This document shows positions 30-11,632 of a stretch of 64,000 nt of DNA, piece after piece. The translations under genes and the position numbers were made by a program. Position 1 is the stretch's first letter, and every line of letters begins with the position of its first letter. Under the pieces are notes generated by a model. The model made no database searches. It was not told the origin of the DNA and saw only the letters and a list, made by a program, of their open reading frames with translations. Source of the stretch: Magallana gigas (lineage: Eukaryota); NCBI RefSeq assembly GCF_963853765.1, contig NC_088856.1, positions 20,522,001-20,586,000 of the forward strand, written 5' to 3'.

Positions 30-1674
30 TTGGAACGAAGAATCAAGAGAAAATATCTTAATGAAGAGGGCAATTTATTAGAAACAATAAGGAAATCTAA
101 TCCTAAAGTATTTTTTTCGAAATTTAGTAGGAGAAAAGTTAACAAAGTAAATGTTTCACTTGTAGATTTACACAATCATTTCATATCCCTTTCTTGTATT
201 GATCATACAGCCGTGGGAAATGACATGGTCGTAGGTGAAAAAGAAGTAATTTTTGAAGAATTAGAAAGTGACATATCTTTAAATGAAATTGAAGATGCTA
301 TAAAGACTTTAAAACCAGGTAAAAGTCATGGACTGGATGGTATAATTAATGAATATTTCATTGAATTCAAGGATATTTTGGTACCTTTTGTACACACAAT
401 TTTTAATGCTATGTTTACAACAGGTCATTTTCCACATATACTGTGTGAGTCTCTCATTGTACCAATATATAAAAAGGGTGGGACAACTGATCCTGCCAAT
501 TATAGAGGAATTAGTTTAATTAGTTGTATGACAAAACTTTTTACTTCAATTTTGAATAAGAGATTTATGTCATGGGCCGAGAAAAATGATGTTATTACAG
601 GCGCACAGTTCGGGTTTAGACCATTTCATAGTACTGTTGATGCCATTTTTGCATTACAAACAATTGTGAACAAATATCTCTCGAAAAAATGTAGATTGTA
701 TTGCGGCTTCGTAGATTTCAAGCGTGCCTTTGACACAGTGGATAGGGTTAAAATGTGGAATAAAATTTCAATGTATGGAATCAGAGGTAAACCTCTGAAG
801 ATTTTACGTTCACTTTATAATAATATTAAGTCTTGTGTTTTATTAGATGGTAAGTTATCAGATTTTTTTGTGAATAATCTTGGTGTTTTACAAGGGGAAA
901 TAATTTCCCCTCTCCTTTTTTCCCTTTATGTCAATGATTGCGAAATGGAATTTTTAAGCAATGGAAATACTCCAATTGAATTACAAGAGCTATCCTTATT
1001 TTTACTGATGTACGCAGACGACATGGTTATTTTTGCAATTACTTTGCAATTAACAAGTATTGGGCTAATGAACTTATGGGAAAACCAATTTTTTGAAAAG
1101 CCAGAAATTATTTTAACGATCGCCAAGCAACGTATTTTTGATAATTTTAAACAGTCTTTACTAGCTGACATAAATGCCTCTTCCAAATGTACAATCTATA
1201 GATATTTAGTTGATCATTGTACCTTGCAGTCATATCTAACAAAAAGAATTCCTTTACAATATAAGAAACTTATATGTAAATTAAGATTATCATCCCATTG
1301 TCTTACCATCGAAACTGGCAGATATAACAATGTTCCATTACAAAGACGTTTATGTCCTCTATGTACTTTAGATATAGAAGATGAATATCATTTTATATTG
1401 AAATGTCCCTATTACTGTAACTTAAGAGAAAAATTCCTTAAGAAGTTTTATTATATTAAACCCTCTGTCTTTAAATTAATTCTATTATTGTCAACACAAA
1501 ATGTAAAGGATTTGTGCAATTTAGGTAAATATATTAAGAATGCTTTTGTAATCAGAAAACTTCATGTATAAACTTGCCTTTTTCAAGTGACCAGTATATG
1601 TATTATAGCATGTGTATATTAATTGTATATGTCTATGAGCTGTACAGCTGTTGACTAATAAACAATACAATACC
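30..1674 (+). mobile_element. Non-LTR retrotransposon (RTE-X-like LINE) 3' part: RT ORF with internal in-frame deletion, C-terminal Cys/His motif and simple-repeat tail
   Basis: ORF 30..1571 has RT motifs (NYRGISL, QFGFR, FVDFKRAFDTV, GVLQG, YADD) and a C-terminal ETGRY..CPLC..EDEYHF..C motif. It ends in AATAAA plus (CAATA)n at ~1658-1674. The 5' end lies outside the window. Confidence 0.9.
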
Positions 1675-4387: not shown

Positions 4388-4702
4388 ATGAATTTTAACT
4401 GAGAAATTGCTATCAAAAACGTAAGATCTCCCTTATTTTAATATGCTTTCAAATGGAATACAAATAAAGAATTTCATTTTCTAACAAATATAACAGGAAA
4501 CTACCTGTGCACAGACCTCATTGGCACAGCCACGCCTAGGTAAAACTGGTTAGCAAACTTGTTTCACATACATGTTTCGTCCCACTTTGATTTGTTGATA
4601 TAAATCCGGGATTGAAAACTGAATTTGGTTTGAGTTCTATAGACGTTATTGATCAGTCGGAACTCCTCGGACTGGTTCCCGAAAGTAAACACGTGAATTG
4701 AA

Positions 4703-4799
4703 CAGGTTGGGACCAATCGCCCAAATGGGATAGAATATCCCAAACGGGTTATTATGACCCAAACGAGCTATATATAGATATCCCAAACAGGCTACATAA
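4703..4799 (+). repeat. Left terminal inverted repeat
   Basis: caggttgggaccaatcgcccaaatggga...gctacataa is the reverse complement of 11633..11729, with 3 mismatches near the inner end. Confidence 0.97.
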
Positions 4800-4881
4800 A
4801 ATTTGGCGGTATATTTTGCACGAGAATTTCCAAAATACGCTTCTTTGCGAGGGATCTGGATTGCTCATAGGGGCCCAAGTT

Positions 4882-4953
4882 TATAAAAGGCAGCTGAAAA
4901 TTCGGTCCTCATAGCCTTAACTGATGCGGAAGTGCGAGAACATAAGGTGAAAA
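4882..4953 (+). promoter_or_regulatory. Putative TATA box and non-coding first exon of the transposase gene
   Basis: TATAAAAG at 4882..4889 and a strong donor GTAAGT at 4954. The acceptor at 5677-5678 lies just before ATG 5681. Confidence 0.55.
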
Positions 4954-5680
4954 GTAAGTCTCTTTTATATTTACGATTACATTTTCCTTGTTAAAGCTAT
5001 TTAAACTTCAGTTAAGCCATAATTACTCTTACCTGCTGAAAAACACGACTTCATTCCGCCATTTTGAAAAGCTTGCATGATCATGTGATCACTAACTGTC
5101 CAATTGAAGAGTGTTTTATAAAATAGGTCATATTTTCAAATAGAATGTATGGTGCGCCATAATGAGAATTATTAAATAATTTTATTAAAACTCTTGTATA
5201 TATGTTTTTGAGGAAACGTATTGAAAAATTTACGGAAATGTTGTTTGAAAGTTGTATAAACGTTTAAAAATCTATGTCACGAATGAATAAAAAGTGATGA
5301 AGGTTAACATACATGCATCATTATATTACGTTACCTATGTAAATATGAAAAATAATGTTCTTAGTGTTAATTTGTCTAAACATATTGCCAAAGTCATTAA
5401 ATCCCTATGAGCATGTTTACTGCAATTTATCTGTGATTTTAAAAATGTAATTCATCAAGATGATATTATGTGCAAGTTTGGAGTTATTAAACGGTACCCA
5501 GTGAATTTGATACTGGTGCATTCTGGTCCGCAATATTTATTGCTGATATAAAGTAAATTATGTTTATAAGATTAACAAATAAGATTGAATACACAATTAG
5601 TTACACATGTTCATTTATGTGAAACAAATTTTTGAGGCTTATATTTACCTTTATCTTATCTAATGATTTTTTATGTAGAT

Positions 5681-7045
5681 ATGCCCCCTAAACGCAAATG
5701 CAGTTGCAAACAGCATGTATACTGTTCAACCCTATTCCCAGACGACGAGGAGATTGTTCAGAGAATATCCGACAAAAAAATTAAAGTTAAAGTCGTTAAC
5801 TTTTTGTTGAAAAGGGAATTTATATTCCCACATTCTACCTTTTTGTGTTCTCTGTGTGTAAAATTTGCTGAGCAGTGTCTTCAGCACGAAGATGAGACTG
5901 AGGAGGCGGCTAAAAAGAAGAAGTTCAGTATTTTGGAGTATTTTGAAGAGTTCCTGGGGGCAGTTTCCAATAATAGACTAACAAGCGATCAGCTGTCTTC
6001 CTTATCATACGCTTTAGGTAATATATCCTCTAACTAACACCTGTAATATTTTACAAGCAACGACGAAATGAAATTTTATTATTTCAAAGAAAAACCAATT
6101 AACTAACTCTGTGTATATATTTTAAGGAGGCAATTATGCATTGGTATTGAATAAATATTTCATACTTTAGGAAAAACACAAACCAAAGCAGTTTACGAGG
6201 ATACTGTGACTTCTGGGAGCCAGTATAAAGATGTAGATTACTTGGAAACGTTCAATCTGAAGGGTAAATAAATAAATTATAGATAATAAACGCACATGTT
6301 CACCCCCCCCCACACACACACACCAACCCCCCCCCCCCCACCCCCACCCCACCCCACACACACACACATACACACTGTTATATTATTTATTGAATATATT
6401 TATATATTATCTATGATATAAATATTTATTATTATAATTGTGTGTCGTTTCAGACTGGTTGCAAGAAAGAAACCATGTTATAGTTAATTTCATCAAAGGG
6501 ATCTGCAACGATGCTTGTGAGGAAATTAGACTAGCAAAGACTGTAGAGTCTATCTACGGGTGTAGAAACAATTCCTTTGTTTCACCAATGTCTTTCTCTC
6601 AAAATCTGCTTGGGTATGTTTAAAATACAGCCACACACACACACACAAGTATTCACGTAATGACTATAATTGCAGTCAAATTACGCCTATTTTATTCAAT
6701 CTACACATTAGTACTGTGTATGTGATGTTTGCATAATTAATTATTTATTCTAATAAATCATTATCTCTATTTATGTTATCTAGATACTACATAACTGGTA
6801 GCAAATCCGCTTTGAGGATAGGGTGTAAGGGCAGTCCATCGGGATCCTACACAACAGTTCAGAACTGGATTTCAGAGCAGAGCAAAGACGCCATAGAATG
6901 CCCCCAAAACGCTGATGTTGTAACATTTTTTGACAATAATCAGGTGATAATAAACATAAACTTTAGTTGCAATAAGCTTATATTCACATATAATTCTATA
7001 TGTACGGTAAACGTTAAGGATTTTGGGGCAAATAATTGGATTAAA

Positions 7046-7129
<84 letters not shown>

Positions 7130-10100
7130 ATACAAGTTATTTGAGTTTGCATATAGTCGTATACGTATATTTACATGTATTTTAAAACAGTATCATATAA
7201 TTTATAATTGAAAAAAAAATATTCCTGTCCAAATTAGGTAATTTTCATAATTTTTTGTGTTGCAACCATAGGTTTTAGAGAAGAAATGGAAGGTGGAGGT
7301 GAATTACAAAGGGAAGGCCAGTGTCGTTACCACCATGGTACATATTATCCCGGACATTGAGAGCAATATTCAACATATTCTGGAACTATCTCCACGACAG
7401 TGGATGAATCACACTAGTGATGGCAAACGAGATACAATTAGTAAAATGAAAGATCTTGATATGATACACTTCGAAACGTTTCGGCACTATAGGTACATTG
7501 TGTTCTATATAAGTAAAATTATAACTCACATTGCATTTATTATCAAATTAAAATTAAATGATAAATTATATGCTGAATAAATATTTTTATAATTTTTTGT
7601 CTGTTTAGAAATGAATTCATTAGAGACAAATTAGAGAAAATTGTTAGCCATCAGGATGACAACGGACTGGACAACATTGATAAGAATTTGCTAAATATAA
7701 CTTATATTACAGCAGAGGAAAGGTACATATTATTTTATTATTAAATAAACGGATTTTTTATACAAAATTAAAATTCGATAAAATTGCATTTTTGTTAATT
7801 TGCAATGATTTGATCATTAAATTTTTTAGGTATTCTTTCATTAAATCTAACGATGGACCAAATCCAACTGTCATCATGGGAGAACCATGTTTCGAAAACC
7901 CCTGTTCTTACGAGGCAGTTGAGAAGGTTTGTAAGTCATGAATCGTTAATTCATCAATCTATTTGTCAACCACTACATGCAGTTGTTAATATTTATTTTA
8001 AATTTATACGCTCTTAGGTTCTTGATCACATTCGAGAGAAGGCGAAGGTGGGTGAGGCGAGGAAATGGACGATGGTTGGGTGTGATGGCCTGCCCTATAC
8101 TCTTGCATCAAGAATCATCGGTTTGTCGCAAATTAAAATACATTAATTTATTAAAAGTGTAAACATAAAAATCACACGAAATCAAAATTGACATCGTAAT
8201 ATATTTTTGTAGAGAACATGTTTACCTGTCCGGATTGTGGCATGGAGTTCATGGATGAACCAGATTTCAAGGAGCACATAAAGAATTACGACCATGCACT
8301 AAACGTCGACATAGAGAAGTGTAGAAAGTACAACGACATTGTCATGTTACCTGGTACATAGTTCTTTGAATTATTTTATAAAACAAGGAAATTTTGTATT
8401 TTTTCTAGTAATCAATAAGAAATAAATACAGCGTTATGCCATATAAAAATGCACAATATTAATTTCAGGACTTGGTCATTATGAGATCAATATGACGAAA
8501 GCCATATTTCGCCTGCTATGGGATGTGATCCTTATAGATCTTGCAAAACTTTTAGGCTTCAATAGCCCAAAAGCACAAGCCTCATTTATGAGCGCAACAG
8601 GTAAAAATAAAATAGTTTTATTTTATAAAAACGAATATTAAAAAAGTTTTGTCCCAACTTTTATCTTATGACATTTATTTTGCAGACCACCACAAAAGCT
8701 GGCAAATTTTTCAGATATTTCTGCAGTCAATGGCTGCAGAGCTTTTGTTGGTATATGTGAGGGATCCGAGTACATCCTCGCCTTCTGTCAGTGGCTTCTA
8801 TGAATGGTATGTTGGGGTTAAAAACCCCAATTATAAGTTTATGGCTGAGGTAGTATTTTCATACTGCCTTGCCCTCCATGTATTTAGAGCAGGGGTCAGG
8901 CGCAACAATTCCACAGCAATTAATGCGTCTAAAACAAAGTTTTCACCATTATTCTTTGGCCTTAACATGCCATTTTACATGGAGACATATATGAGGGACT
9001 CATTTGTTCGAATTCAGTGCCCAAGTAAAGTACGTGGGTTTATTGAGGAACATGAGTCCTACAGAGTTTCTGGCAGTGATGCCAAGGGTGAGGGGGGTGA
9101 TTTTATATTAGAAGCCAAAAACAGGAAAACGAAGATGTGGATCCAAAATGGAGTGCCTGATGAGGAGAAGTGGAGAAATGTTTGTAGGTGCATTGACAAA
9201 CTAGAAAAGGTAACTTCAGCCATTTTGAAATAAAAAAAACCAATAACTCATTTACTTTTTTTATTCTTATCTTTAGCATTATCTTTAGCAATCATGATAT
9301 GGTGAGGGCATTTCCATCCAATTCTGCTCAGAGGTGCTTTGGTTGTGGCTGTAATGCCAACGCACAAAGCATGCACCCAGTACTCGCATGTCTGCTTCAC
9401 CCGCCCACGCTGCGAGACATGTGAACACCCAATCCAGAGAGCCTTGGTATCTTTCCTCCCTTCTCCACAGAATCTACACAGTGTAGAATCTTGAACTGTG
9501 GAGAAGGAGGACTCCGATGTCTGCGTCTCTGTATGGCGCGTCCTGCTCCTTATGGGTGACAACGACAGGGATGTCCTGGGGTCCATTGAGCTTGTAGATG
9601 GGACGTCTTCTTTTTGTTGGGGTCCATCTTGAACATTGATCTTTCCCTGAAATTTATAACATAGGGAATAAAAGTACTCTTTTAATATTAATTGAGTTCT
9701 TTTTTATGACGTTCATACATAAAATATTTATATATGAAATAAAGTATTCATTAATTTATTACCAAGTCAAAATTCACCCCTGCAGACTTGTACACATATT
9801 CTGTCCCTCCAGGGCTCTTTAAGTATAAGACGCAGTCTGCGCCTGTGGTTTCGTGTATCTCTTTTGCCTAAAGTAGATACATGCATGTATATTTTTCATA
9901 CAAATGCATATATATCTTAACATCATTATACATTTCCAATCATAATAATGCGTGTGTTGAACCAAAATTATTGAGAATTGTGTTTTTGAAAAGGGGGGGG
10001 GGGTGCCGCCATTTTTTCTTGGGGTGGGGGTGGCAAAGCCGATTTCCGTTACCTTTTACTATGTCATTTCTTTAACTTTTTTCTGCGATGTTTAATTTAA

Positions 10101-10661
10101 TGAAATAATTTTACAATCGTTTTATTTTTTATTTTTAAACAATTTATTTACAAAACTTTTCATATTTTTGTATAGGTCAGAGGAAACTTGAGTGCTGCTC
10201 TATGCATTTGTGAGCTTGATGCCGAATACGCTTACATGTACAATATTGATTTTGAAATCAATTGTTTTAGACAGTCTATCAGAGAATCAGGCTACATAAA
10301 TGAGCCGTTCAAAGAAAAGAGTCACACGTCTTTTAGTGGGAAATCCTTGGACCGTTCATTGACGGAGTTTCACGTAAACTCATTGCGACACCGCGAAGAC
10401 TTTATGAATTTTATTATCAACCACAGCCTCAGTGACAGAAAAAAATTTCCTCCGATTTTTGTTCTCACAGACGAAAGGACAAAAGCAGAATCCATTGTTA
10501 ATAAAACAAAACCCGAAATTATTAAGATAATTGAAGGTGAACTTGAGGATATAAACAATGAGAAAATCAATGCCGAGTGGAGGAAAGTTAAATCGAAGAC
10601 AAAAGCAGATATTCTTAAATTTTATCATGATGTTTTAAAATCGGAGGGCCGAAATGATTAA
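5681..10661 (+). CDS. Putative DDE-type transposase, 12 coding exons, 855 aa, distantly Academ/Transib-like
   Basis: Phase-consistent GT-AG exons: 5681-6017, 6171-6263, 6454-6613, 6784-6943, 7272-7492, 7609-7722, 7830-7926, 8018-8120, 8213-8353, 8469-8600, 8686-9209, 10176-10661 (2,568 nt, no internal stop). Motifs: FFDNNQ, VGCDGLPY, a C2H2-like CPDC..H..H insertion, PGLGHYE, GGDFILEAKN; N-terminal CxCxxH..CxxC. Confidence 0.88.
7051..7123. repeat. (CT)n microsatellite in a transposase intron
   Basis: Direct reading. Confidence 0.95.
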
Positions 10662-11587
10662 ATTTTTATATGTATATATTGCAATTTTTATGCTGACAAT
10701 TACTTGGAATGTTATTTTCCTTATCACATAATTGTAAATACACCTGTAAAACTTGCAATTAGAATATGTAAATGTTTCACAAATGTAGTATTTTTATCTG
10801 TATATATTGTATGATATTTTAAAAAAACAGTGTGATATGTAAATAATACTAAATATAAACTTTATTTATTTGTAAATATTGTATATATATATAATGAAAC
10901 ATCACATTATGTTACATCATAATATCATCATATTATATAATCAAAATTGTATATTTGTAAATATAAACTTTATTTATTTAATTTAATTGAAAACAATTAA
11001 TAAAACATATTCTTACTTTCTCTAGAAGAGTGTTTTTTCTCTTAAAAAATGATTGGCTAACGCTCCTTGATCCAACTTGGGATGGAACCTGTCTCCTGTT
11101 CTTCCCAAGAGTTAGATTAGAAACTTTTCCGCTTCTGCCATTTTTTCTCTGTTAAAAAATTTCAATGCAAATTTAATATATTAACGTCATATTTTATAAT
11201 ATAGAACGAAATCTAATGTTATTGGCGCATTTCATTTTCCTTATAAATTAATATTTTATTTTAGTCCTTCTGGTGCTCCATACAATAAGCTCTAAATTTC
11301 AACCACACCAAAGATCATAGCCATTTTCTGATTGGATAATTTGATCTCGCGAGAAGTTATTGTTTCAATATGTCTTCCATGTGTTAGTGTCGAAGAAAAT
11401 TACTTCAACTTTTGTTGATATTAGAACATAAAGGTAAGTTTAAAGAAAAACAGTTAAGGTCACCGTGCAAAAGGACTGACTCATGTTTTAGTAAATAAGT
11501 TTATGAAGTGAATAGGGATGAAAAATACGTAGAATTTAACTCAATCTACAGATAATGACTCAATTTCCTTACCAATGTACTCGACAT
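9248..11587 (-). CDS. Transposon-encoded MADS-box-like + PHD-finger protein, 4 exons, 211 aa
   Basis: Phase-0 GT-AG exons 11587-11573 (MSSTL), 11148-11017, 9867-9778 and 9646-9248. The spliced peptide SFFKRKNTLLEK|AKEIHETTGADCVLYLKSPGGTEYVY matches the MADS/SRF pattern. The C-terminus CRFC..WIGCSH..C..WVHALC..WKCPHH is a PHD finger. Confidence 0.82.
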
Positions 11588-11632
11588 CTTGCGGAAACAA
11601 GTCTTCTTTTTCTTGCAGAAAAAAAAACCGCG

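What the first reader, a model, noticed from the sequence alone, without database searches (positions are those of the whole stretch)
9290..9490. PHD finger resembles the non-canonical RAG2 PHD; architecture parallels ProtoRAG
Seen: WIGCSH...YWVHALC...WKCPHH. Knowledge: the RAG2 PHD reads MIYCSH..HWVHAQC..YYCNEH and ends in C-x2-H rather than C-x2-C. RAG-like transposons carry convergent RAG1L and RAG2L genes and make 5-bp TSDs. Inference: this may be a relative or a convergent analogue of the RAG transposon with MADS in place of the kelch propeller, which bears on where the RAG2 PHD came from. The resemblance rests on short motifs and could be convergent.
Basis: partly seen in the sequence, partly recalled or inferred. 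Interest (0 to 1): 0.72.

Follow-up and report, generated by a model that had tools for sequence, protein, structure and literature searches.

The report
Transposon PHD finger, not RAG2-like
The PHD finger is real and belongs to the helper gene of a young, intact two-gene jumping element in an oyster, but it is an ordinary histone-reader type of finger with no special kinship to RAG2; the only real link to RAG is a zinc domain at the start of the cutting enzyme in related elements.

Summary
Observation confirmed. Window 9299-9478 (minus strand) encodes a PHD finger (Pfam PF00628, 26.5 bits, cut-off 24). It is the last exon of a 4-exon, 216-aa gene.

That gene lies inside a 7,027-bp DNA transposon (4703-11729) with about 100-bp inverted ends and 5-bp target duplications. 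There are four copies, 97-100% identical, and all coding exons checked are open. It converges on, and interleaves with, a transposase gene of at least 10 exons.

The specific RAG2 reading fails:
- "CSH" is not conserved in sister families.
- "W-x-H-x-x-C" is generic to PHD fingers.
- The final C-x2-H is conserved here but is a vertebrate-only trait in RAG2. The oyster's own RAG2-like gene and 13 other invertebrate ones end in C-x2-C.
- RAG2 ranks about 42nd among solved PHD sequences and is absent from the top 50 fold matches.

The architectural parallel holds: convergent pair, 5-bp duplications, CA..TG ends. One true homology exists. The N-terminus of the transposase family matches the RAG1 N-terminal zinc ("Chapa") domain (hhalign 94%). 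The catalytic core shows no significant match to RAG1 and resembles the P element transposase more.

Another copy of this element was already noted by the scan (s1-361625).

The parts
4698..4702 (.). Left copy of the 5-bp target-site duplication (TTGAA)
   Evidence: The same 5 bases flank both ends in each of four copies: TTGAA, TTCAA, TTGAA, TTCAA. A sister subfamily has GTAAA and TTCTA, which shows the duplication is 5 bp rather than 3.
4703..4799 (+). Left terminal inverted repeat, starting 5'-CAGGTTGGGACC
   Evidence: 102-nt inverted repeat, 96% complementary (I1). The homology among the four copies ends exactly here.
4768..4777 (.). MEF2-type MADS site CTATATATAG inside the left repeat
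   Evidence: Lies at position 66 of both arms. The sister subfamily has a CArG box, CCTTTTATGG, at position 55 of both arms. Background over the window, both strands (128 kb): 62 and 8 sites respectively.
5663..10661 (+). Transposase gene, at least 10 exons. Approximate exons: 5681-6034, 6447-6617, 6776-6949, 7272-7493, 7828-7935, 8018-8119, 8200-8358, 8456-8611, 8682-9218, 10176-10658.
   Evidence: Exons mapped by local tblastn with 11 homologous proteins. Each exon is intact in all four copies. Exact splice junctions of this gene were not determined.
5681..6034 (+). Transposase exon 1: reduced version of the RAG1 N-terminal ('Chapa') zinc domain
   Evidence: Alignment A5. This clade keeps C-x-C..H and the P-H-S..C-x2-C element but lacks the middle ID...D...HP..IC block that amphioxus relatives and RAG1-like proteins share. 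Pfam PF12560 does not hit this exon alone.
6932..6934 (+). Predicted first catalytic Asp (FDNNQ motif)
   Evidence: Invariant column D233 in A1. It lies on strand 1 of the RNase H fold in the model.
8084..8086 (+). Predicted second catalytic Asp (CDGLPY motif)
   Evidence: Invariant column D473 in A1 and D324 in A4. It lies at the end of a strand in the model.
8200..8358 (+). C2H2-type zinc finger inserted after the second Asp (C-x2-C ... H-x5-H)
   Evidence: Pfam zf-C2H2, 21.3 bits, below cut-off. The C, C and first H columns are at least 90% conserved in A1.
9111..9113 (+). Predicted catalytic Glu (LEAKNRK motif)
   Evidence: Invariant E686 and N689 in A1. It lies on a helix after the all-helical insertion domain. 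Coordinates.
9248..9646 (-). Helper gene exon 4: linker, PHD finger and basic tail, ending in the stop codon
   Evidence: Acceptor TTTCAG. ORF. It lies inside the last intron of the transposase gene.
9299..9478 (-). PHD finger of C4HC2H type: the finding itself
9763..9867 (-). Helper gene exon 3: second half of the MADS-like domain
   Evidence: Canonical AG and GT splice sites. Conserved in sister families. A local HMM hits real MADS-box exons.
11017..11148 (-). Helper gene exon 2: first half of the MADS-like domain, ending ...F-x-K-R-K-N-T-L-L-E-K
11573..11587 (-). Helper gene exon 1 (five codons: M-S-S-T-L), just inside the right inverted repeat
   Evidence: ATG followed by donor GTAAGG. This is inferred from the sequence only; no reads could be laid.
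11633..11729 (-). Right terminal inverted repeat, holding the same MEF2-type site at 11655-11664
11730..11734 (.). Right copy of the 5-bp target-site duplication (TTGAA)

Best explanation
The PHD finger is the C-terminal domain of a 216-aa accessory protein. That protein is encoded by a young, apparently autonomous cut-and-paste DNA transposon of an oyster.

The element:
- 7,027 bp, with inverted ends of about 100 bp starting CAGGTTGGGA.
- 5-bp target duplications.
- Two convergent, mutually interleaved genes.

Gene 1 is a DDE transposase with an RNase H fold. It belongs to a large unnamed eukaryotic family (Pfam DUF6589). Many members begin with the zinc domain also found at the N-terminus of RAG1, the 'Chapa' domain of Chapaev / N-RAG-TP elements.

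Gene 2 joins an SRF/MEF2-like (MADS-like) domain to the PHD finger.

The PHD finger is a normal cross-brace finger whose last ligand is His. Its nearest sequence and fold relatives are readers of the methylated histone H3 tail: TAF3, BPTF, ALFIN, ING, Pps.

Inferred, not shown: the MADS-like part binds the MADS-type sites in both inverted repeats, and the PHD finger ties the transposase complex, or the element's expression, to marked chromatin. This would be the job that RAG2's PHD finger does for RAG1, reached independently.

The letter-level likeness to vertebrate RAG2 is partly generic to PHD fingers and partly coincidence.
For: Element and copies. All coding exons checked are intact in four copies. 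5-bp duplications of unrelated sequence in a sister subfamily.

Gene models.

PHD finger: Pfam; family alignment; ranking against PDB sequences; fold; ranking within the genome.

RAG2-like comparison: the oyster's own RAG-like element has a kelch + PHD protein ending in C-x2-C. Thirteen further invertebrate RAG2-like proteins do the same. PMC7204232 gives the same two ligand patterns.

The helper stays beside the transposase in diverged families, in Mercenaria and on a metagenome contig.

Transposase:
- 747 relatives at E <= 1e-3.
- DUF6589 in 12 of 25 and PF12560 in 6 of 25 members.
- N-terminus against RAG1-like N-terminus: 94%, E 1.3e-7; reversed control E 0.26.
- Model pLDDT 84.

MADS-likeness: the helper HMM finds two true MADS-box exons as its best hits outside the family, E 1e-4 and 2e-3 among 8,251 segments.

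MADS-type sites in the repeats of two subfamilies.
Against: - No binding, expression or transposition was measured.
- Pfam SRF-TF hits neither the separate exons nor the unspliced relative.
- The PHD finger lacks an aromatic residue before its first Cys, so which histone mark it reads, if any, is open.
- The superfamily of the transposase is unsettled. Its ends are CAG, not CAC. Its duplication is 5 bp, not the 3-4 bp of Chapaev. The core does not match RAG1-like proteins by profile (E 0.25).
- Two paralogous PHD fingers give weak sub-threshold hits to Pfam RAG2_PHD: 16.4 and 14.4 bits, cut-off 27.
Confidence: 0.72

Rival explanations
1. True kinship. This element and RAG-like transposons descend from one two-gene ancestor whose helper already carried the PHD finger. 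On this reading the MADS-like domain replaced (or was replaced by) the kelch propeller, and the two PHD fingers are homologous by descent within transposons.
For: - Convergent gene pair, 5-bp duplication and CA..TG ends.
- N-terminal RAG1-type zinc domain in the transposase family.
- A colinear but non-significant hhalign path pairs G-H-x-E-x-N with T-H-x-D-I-N and E-E-x-N-R with N-E-x-G-N-K.
- Weak RAG2_PHD hits in two paralogues.
Against: - Core against RAG1-like core: E 0.25, with a reversed control at E 0.64.
- RAG1 Z 6.3-6.7 against P element Z 11.9.
- The RAG2-like PHD finger ranks below about 19 PHD-like hits outside the element family.
- The ligand pattern differs from invertebrate RAG2-like proteins at the first pair (x2 against x4-7) and the last ligand (H against C).
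- The amphioxus relative has the MADS-like helper without any PHD finger. This suggests the PHD finger is a later addition within this family.
Confidence: 0.08
2. The PHD exon is a captured piece of a host chromatin gene. It plays no part in transposition, and the helper acts only as a transcription factor for the element or on host genes.
For: - Best matches are ordinary host reader fingers.
- The helper has a transcription-factor-like domain.
- The MEF2-type site in the right repeat sits where a TATA box or promoter element of the helper gene would be.
Against: - The PHD finger is kept, with invariant ligands and the C-P-x-H ending, across subfamilies whose transposases are only 42-62% identical, and in at least one other bivalve.
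- No host PHD exon in this genome scores near the family: 25 bits or less against 47-106 bits.
- The MADS-type sites lie in both repeats, not only at the promoter end.
Confidence: 0.15
3. The pair is a domesticated host gene cluster rather than a mobile element, so any parallel with transposons is historical only.
For: Both genes have introns and intact frames.
Against: - Four copies on four chromosomes, 97-100% identical.
- They are bounded by identical inverted repeats and by different 5-bp duplications at unrelated sites.
- Many decayed relatives carry stop codons.
Confidence: 0.03

Closest known systems
RAG-like (RAGL / ProtoRAG) transposons, including this oyster's own copy (RAG1-like L017:373-3420:+, RAG2-like L035:892-2223:-)
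   Same: Two convergent genes. A transposase plus a helper that ends in a PHD finger. 5-bp target duplications. Ends beginning CA. The transposase family shares the RAG1 N-terminal zinc domain.
   Different: - No Pfam RAG1 core match, while the oyster RAG1-like protein scores 284 bits.
- The helper has a MADS-like domain, not a kelch propeller.
- The ends are CAGGTTGGGA, not the CAC heptamer-like end.
- The PHD ligand pattern differs from both the invertebrate and the vertebrate RAG2 patterns.
- The genes are multi-exon and interleaved.
Chapaev / Chapaev3 / N-RAG-TP elements (Kapitonov and Koonin 2015, PMC4411706; Zhang et al. 2014, PMC4079192; Panchin and Moroz 2008, not held in the library)
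   Same: N-terminal 'Chapa' zinc domain homologous to the RAG1 N-terminus. Animal hosts including molluscs and amphioxus. CA..TG ends. Short duplication within the 2-5 bp range given for the CACTA-Mirage-Chapaev-Transib group (PMC12730594). A C-x2-C shortly after the second Asp.
   Different: - The literature gives Chapaev 3-4 bp duplications and CAC..GTG ends. Here they are 5 bp and CAG..CTG.
- The C-x2-C and H-x4-H form one contiguous C2H2 finger, not two distant halves.
- The published Chapaev3 transposase (Garfield_BM) has quite different catalytic motifs.
- No second gene is described in the papers I could read.
- Repbase could not be searched, so membership is untested.
PIF/Harbinger two-gene transposons (own knowledge)
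   Same: A transposase plus a separate small DNA-binding helper, which in Harbinger binds the subterminal repeats and recruits the transposase.
   Different: Unrelated transposase. The helper there is Myb/SANT-like, not MADS-like + PHD. The duplication is 3 bp.
Histone H3 tail reader PHD fingers (TAF3, BPTF, ALFIN-like, ING, Pps/DIDO)
   Same: Best sequence matches: 22-24 bits. Best fold matches: probability 0.98-0.99, TM 0.54-0.68. The Trp in C-x2-W-x-H is conserved.
   Different: The last ligand is His, not Cys. This subfamily has a 12-residue loop between ligands 3 and 4. There is no aromatic residue before ligand 1.
Drosophila P element transposase (6p5a)
   Same: Best structural match of the transposase core: Z 11.9, 347 residues aligned, rmsd 5.7.
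   Different: No THAP domain and no Pfam P element match. The duplication is 5 bp, not 8 bp. Foldseek is not significant.

Membership tests
PHD finger (Pfam PF00628) | Profile match above the curated cut-off | tested here: met
   26.5 bits against a cut-off of 24. Paralogues score 19-29 bits.
PHD finger (Pfam PF00628) | Cross-brace Cys4-His-Cys3 ligand set and PHD fold | tested here: met
   Seven of eight ligands are canonical and the eighth is His; the six ligands covered by all eight rows are invariant, the first C-x2-C pair being absent only from the truncated Mercenaria row. The model has pLDDT 83.7, and all top-50 fold matches are PHD fingers.
RAG2 / RAG2-like PHD finger | Pfam RAG2_PHD (PF13341) match | tested here: not met
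   No hit for this exon at E <= 10 and none at this locus in the genome scan. Two paralogues reach only 16.4 and 14.4 bits against a cut-off of 27. Caveat: the oyster's true RAG2-like protein also fails this vertebrate-trained model.
RAG2 / RAG2-like PHD finger | Ligand pattern. Vertebrate: CCx2Cx22Cx5-6Hx2Hx2Cx19Cx2H. Invertebrate: Cx4-7Cx14-16Cx2-4Cx4Hx2Cx11-18Cx2C (PMC7204232). | tested here: not met
   Here the pattern is Cx2Cx13Cx12Cx4Hx2Cx17Cx2H. In the family it is Cx2C...Cx4-12Cx4Hx2C...Cx2H. Ligand 4 is Cys with x4 spacing, unlike the vertebrate pattern. The first pair and the last ligand differ from the invertebrate pattern.
RAG2 / RAG2-like PHD finger | Closer to RAG2 than to other PHD families | tested here: not met
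   About rank 42 of PDB sequences, 15.0 bits. Not in Foldseek's top 50. The oyster RAG2-like PHD finger ranks 54 of 59.
RAG2 / RAG2-like protein | Kelch propeller followed by a PHD finger | tested here: not met
   The helper is 216 aa with a MADS-like N-terminal part and no kelch repeats. There is no PF03089 hit in the genome.
RAG-like transposon | RAG1 / Transib-type catalytic core | tested here: not met
   PF12940 hits 0 of 25 family members and nothing at this locus. hhalign core against core gives E 0.25. RAG1 Z 6.3-6.7 against P element Z 11.9.
RAG-like transposon | Convergent gene pair and 5-bp target duplication | tested here: met
RAG-like transposon | Inverted repeats starting with a CAC heptamer-like end | tested here: not met
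   The ends are CAGGTTGGGA in two subfamilies.
Chapaev-like (Chapa-domain) transposons | N-terminal Chapa / RAG1 N-terminal zinc domain | tested here: inconclusive
   Met for the family: PF12560 above cut-off in 6 of 25 members, and hhalign 94%. This element's own exon 1 keeps only part of the domain and does not hit PF12560.
Chapaev-like (Chapa-domain) transposons | CAC..GTG ends and a 3-4 bp duplication (PMC4079192) | tested here: not met
   CAG..CTG ends and a 5-bp duplication.
Chapaev-like (Chapa-domain) transposons | Sequence similarity of the transposase to Repbase Chapaev families | not testable with these tools
   Repbase is not on hand. The one published Chapaev3 protein I could read shows different catalytic motifs by eye.
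MADS-box (Pfam SRF-TF, PF00319) | Profile match to the MADS box | tested here: inconclusive
   Pfam does not hit the exons singly or the unspliced relative. A local HMM of four spliced helpers hits two true oyster MADS exons at E 1e-4 and 2e-3. The spliced protein has no reference, so it could not be sent to Pfam.
P element superfamily | THAP domain, Pfam P element transposase match, 8-bp duplication | tested here: not met
   There are no such Pfam hits and the duplication is 5 bp. Only a structural likeness exists, Z 11.9.

The most novel reading that the evidence does not exclude
This family would be a living relative of the element that gave RAG1 its N-terminal region. Like RAG-like transposons, it pairs its transposase with a convergent helper carrying a histone-reader PHD finger, and it makes 5-bp duplications. 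Either the two-gene, chromatin-reading layout goes back to a common ancestor of both lineages, or it arose twice in elements that share the same N-terminal zinc domain. The second case would point to a functional coupling between that domain and a PHD-bearing partner.
Probability: 0.12. Interest if true: 0.85.

Novelty: new variant of a known kind. Interest (0 to 1): 0.5.

Why it matters
The claimed clue to the origin of the RAG2 PHD finger does not hold, which spares a false lead.

What remains is still useful. It is an intact, probably active two-gene DNA transposon whose transposase family shares the RAG1 N-terminal zinc domain. Its helper combines a DNA-binding-like domain with a chromatin-reader finger.

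It offers an independent, testable case of how a transposase recruits a histone reader. That is the same design that made RAG dependent on H3K4me3. It may also show what the RAG1 N-terminal domain does in a transposon setting.

It also shows that a 5-bp duplication and a convergent gene pair are not by themselves diagnostic of RAG-like elements.

Tried and rejected
- Reads. There is therefore no evidence on expression or splicing. One exception must be declared: a local tblastn inside a script used the element, these 41 bases included, as the subject. Later scripts masked them.
- ESM Atlas by features on the last large transposase exon: nothing usable, best score 0.83.
- Transposase family profile against PDB sequences: only zinc-finger noise.
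- Foldseek of the transposase core: nothing at E <= 1e-3.
- hAT5 (hAT elements with 5-bp duplications) was considered because of the CAGG ends. It was rejected: no hAT dimerisation domain or other hAT Pfam hit in 25 members, and the nearest hAT-like Atlas cluster has TM of only 0.40.
- A 3-bp duplication (TSA between T and A, by analogy with the TWA of Chapaev3) was considered. It was rejected by the sister subfamily's GTAAA and TTCTA.
- A 48-nt in-frame mini-intron inside helper exon 2 was considered. It was rejected because it would remove the MADS-like F-x-K-R-K motif.
- Alignment A6, built from separate exon pieces, misaligned and was not used.
- Two homologue loci (amphioxus L036 and metagenome contig L038) showed no PHD finger beside the transposase.
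Full report
1. THE OBSERVATION

On the minus strand, window 9299-9478 reads C-R-F-C ... W-I-G-C-S-H ... C-E-Y-W-V-H-A-L-C ... W-K-C-P-H-H. Pfam calls it a PHD finger: PF00628, 26.5 bits, cut-off 24. AlphaFold2 folds it with pLDDT 83.7, and all 50 best Foldseek matches are PHD fingers.

2. WHAT SURROUNDS IT

Host. The genome has 564 Mb in 29 contigs. Sequencing runs that hold the stretch are labelled as oyster.

Copies and ends.
- The region occurs four times on four chromosomes at 97-100% identity.
- Homology among the copies starts and stops at 4703 and 11729. The inverted ends are about 100 bp and begin CAGGTTGGGACC.
- Each copy is flanked by a direct 5-bp repeat: TTGAA, TTCAA, TTGAA, TTCAA.
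- These all fit T-T-S-A-A, so a 3-bp duplication could not be excluded from them alone.
- I therefore took a sister subfamily whose transposase is 62% identical. Its two copies have the same first ten bases and are flanked by GTAAA and TTCTA. The duplication is 5 bp.

The transposase gene.
- Homologous proteins map by tblastn to at least ten plus-strand exons from 5681 to 10658.
- The last exon (10176-10658) lies beyond the PHD exon. The PHD exon therefore sits in the last transposase intron, and the last transposase exon sits in an intron of the minus-strand gene.

The helper gene.
- It has four exons with canonical GT/AG sites: 11573-11587, 11017-11148, 9763-9867 and 9248-9646.
- It encodes 216 aa.

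All these exons are open in all four copies.

3. THE PHD FINGER AGAINST RAG2

I collected the same exon from diverged paralogues, from Mercenaria mercenaria and from a metagenome contig, and aligned them (A2).

What the family alignment shows:
- Invariant features are the C-x2-C pair (absent only from the truncated Mercenaria row), the third Cys, C-x2-W-x-H-x2-C and C-P-x-H.
- The 12-residue loop after it exists only in this subfamily. Others have the canonical 4-5 residues.
- Ligand 4 is a Cys placed four residues before the His, as in ordinary PHD fingers. In vertebrate RAG2 ligand 4 is a His two residues before the next His.

Rankings:
- The single exon against PDB sequences: Pps, MLL3, DIDO1, DATF1, TAF3 and ALFIN come up, and no RAG2 chain appears at E <= 10.
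- The family profile: Pps 23.9 bits, TAF3 22.1, BPTF 21.4, then ALFIN, ING, SIZ1, MLL3, DIDO, Jade, PHF2. Zebrafish RAG2 scores 15.0 bits (E 0.23, about rank 42). Mouse RAG2 scores 14.2 and 13.8 bits.
- Foldseek on the model: AL1, TAF3, Pygo, AL3, MLL1, MLL3, BPTF. No RAG2 chain is in the top 50.

The genome supplies its own control.
- It holds true RAG-like elements. The RAG1-like ORF of 1,015 aa scores 284 bits on PF12940, and also carries PF12560 and a RING finger.
- A convergent 443-aa protein has kelch repeats and a PHD finger.
- That PHD finger ends in C-x2-C.
- Thirteen further invertebrate RAG2-like proteins, including Mercenaria, Ruditapes and Ptychodera, also end in C-x2-C.
- Martin et al. 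2020 (PMC7204232) give the same result: the invertebrate pattern ends Cx2C and only the vertebrate pattern ends Cx2H.
- The shared C-x2-H is thus a derived vertebrate trait, not an ancestral RAG2 trait.
- Searching the whole genome with the element's PHD profile gives about 34 family members at 25-106 bits, then further PHD-like hits outside the family, most of them in long open host frames, at 25-18 bits. The RAG2-like PHD finger comes at 17.8 bits, rank 54 of 59.

Two caveats:
- Pfam RAG2_PHD is not hit by this exon. However, it also misses the true oyster RAG2-like protein, so that test is weak.
- Two paralogues give sub-threshold hits to it, 16.4 and 14.4 bits. These rank behind PHD, PHD_NSD, zf-HC5HC2H and SLX1_C.

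4. THE TRANSPOSASE

Family. The last large exon finds 747 relatives at E <= 1e-3 among 1.84 billion representatives. They include proteins of Tegillarca, Mercenaria, Owenia and Branchiostoma, all unnamed.

Domains. Of 25 full-length members:
- 12 hit Pfam DUF6589.
- 6 hit PF12560 (RAG1 importin-binding region) above cut-off, at profile positions 142-267.
- None hits the RAG1 core.

The oyster's true RAG1-like protein hits the same part of PF12560.

The N-terminal domain.
- This is the "Chapa" domain of Kapitonov and Koonin (PMC4411706). It is also the basis of the N-RAG-TP idea (PMC8355894 and PMC8374863).
- hhalign of the N-termini gives 94%, E 1.3e-7. The reversed control gives E 0.26.
- This element's clade keeps only part of the domain.

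The catalytic core.
- The cores do not match: score 20.1, E 0.25, against a reversed control of 15.7.
- A permissive colinear path does pair G-H-x-E-x-N with T-H-x-D-I-N and E-E-x-N-R with N-E-x-G-N-K. It is not significant.
- The family profile against PDB sequences finds no transposase.

Structure.
- A model of an intronless paralogue (residues 150-800, 49 sequences) has pLDDT 84 and pTM 0.84. It shows an RNase H fold with a helical insertion domain, and the three acidic residues sit in the expected places.
- VIA-align against 48,161 chains gives:
  - P element transposase: Z 11.9, 347 residues aligned.
  - ISCth4: Z 9.0.
  - Hermes: Z 8.9.
  - Integrases: Z 8-9.
  - RAG1: Z 6.7 and 6.3.
  - Amphioxus RAG1-like: Z 6.3.
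- Foldseek finds nothing significant.
- The ESM Atlas finds cnidarian and fungal DUF6589 clusters at TM 0.66-0.72 and then a hAT-like cluster at TM 0.40.

Against the literature.
- The element fits the broad CACTA-Mirage-Chapaev-Transib description: CA..TG ends, 2-5 bp duplications, and a C-x2-C after the second Asp (PMC12730594).
- It does not fit the Chapaev hallmarks of CAC..GTG ends and 3-4 bp duplications (PMC4079192).
- Its motifs differ from the one Chapaev3 protein I could read.
- I therefore call it Chapa-domain-bearing and Chapaev-like, with the superfamily unsettled.

5. THE REST OF THE HELPER

Across subfamilies the two middle exons read, in outline, T-F-S-x-R-K-x-T-x-F-T-K then A-x-E/D-L-x-x-T-T-G-A-x-V ... 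G-x-x-Y-V-Y. By eye this is close to the SRF-type MADS box.
- Pfam does not hit the pieces or an unspliced relative.
- An HMM of four spliced helpers, built in a script, was searched against 8,251 six-frame segments of everything fetched. Its best hits outside the family are the two strongest true MADS-box exons of this genome, at E 1e-4 and 2e-3.
- The next hit is the convergent gene beside the amphioxus transposase, at E 8e-3. That amphioxus protein has no PHD finger and ends in an Arg-Gly-rich tail.
- The MADS-like core therefore looks like the older part of the helper, and the PHD finger like an addition.

Sites in the inverted repeats.
- Both repeats of this element hold CTATATATAG at position 66.
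- Both repeats of the sister subfamily, otherwise unlike after base 10, hold CCTTTTATGG at position 55.
- Background counts are 62 and 8 per 128 kb.
- This observation is post hoc and counts only as a lead.

6. HOW IT MOST LIKELY WORKS

Shown:
- A mobile, recently active two-gene element.
- A DDE transposase with an RNase H fold.
- A conserved helper with a PHD finger.

Inferred:
- The helper binds the MADS-type sites in the ends through its N-terminal part, as the Myb-like helper does in Harbinger (own knowledge).
- The PHD finger reads the histone H3 tail. This rests on its nearest relatives being H3K4me2/3 readers, and on the conserved Trp at the position of their cage Trp.
- Cutting, target choice or expression would then be linked to chromatin state.

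This is what RAG2 does for RAG1, so the element works like a RAG-like transposon in layout. It is not a member of that family.

7. VERDICT

- The RAG2-specific reading of the PHD finger is wrong.
- The parallel in architecture is real.
- One homology with RAG1, the N-terminal zinc domain in the transposase family, is real and already known in principle.
- I found no paper describing a MADS-like + PHD helper or 5-bp duplications for such elements. Repbase was not searchable.
- Another copy of this element was already reported in this scan (s1-361625).

Noticed in passing
G000:C2:53472635-53477822 (L017:373-3420:+ and L035:892-2223:-); second copy near G000:C9:44604791-44607645: Intact RAG-like transposon genes in the same genome. 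A 1,015-aa RAG1-like ORF carries the core, RING and N-terminal zinc domains. A convergent 443-aa kelch + PHD RAG2-like ORF lies beside it. Known for oysters (PMC7204232); used here as a control.
   Followed up: partly
L036:13614-14015 (-), Branchiostoma, downstream of transposase P0091: The amphioxus relative has a convergent 133-aa gene whose start resembles the second half of the MADS-like domain. It ends in an Arg-Gly-rich tail and has no PHD finger.
   Followed up: partly
G000:C4:18070327-18076956 and G000:C9:18036521-18043092 (sister subfamily; L022, L040-L043): Two 98%-identical copies of a sister element with the same first ten terminal bases. They have 5-bp duplications GTAAA and TTCTA, and a CArG box CCTTTTATGG at position 55 of both inverted repeats.
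   Followed up: partly
G000:C7:42146246-42148942 (L021:2747-5443:+): An intronless 898-aa open reading frame of the same transposase family, 28% identical. It lacks the C2H2 insertion, and no PHD finger was found nearby. It may be a domesticated or solo copy.
   Followed up: partly
window 30-1571 (+): A 513-aa ORF with reverse-transcriptase-like motifs (Y-A-D-D), probably part of a non-LTR retrotransposon.
   Followed up: no
window 7045-7125: A (GA)n microsatellite inside a transposase intron. It gives long Leu-Ser and Glu-Arg repeat ORFs in several frames.
   Followed up: no
copy on G000:C1 (about 4471500-4491400), at the place matching window ~10796: This copy carries an extra insertion of about 1.7 kb in the helper gene's intron. 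All of its exons remain open.
   Followed up: no
I worked beside them, except for the local tblastn declared under Tried and rejected.
   Followed up: no
G000:C7:41249912-41255518 and G000:C6:37199594-37206489: Weak Pfam SRF-TF hits (16-19 bits) lie next to further decayed relatives of the transposase and of the PHD exon. This fits a MADS-like helper in other subfamilies.
   Followed up: no
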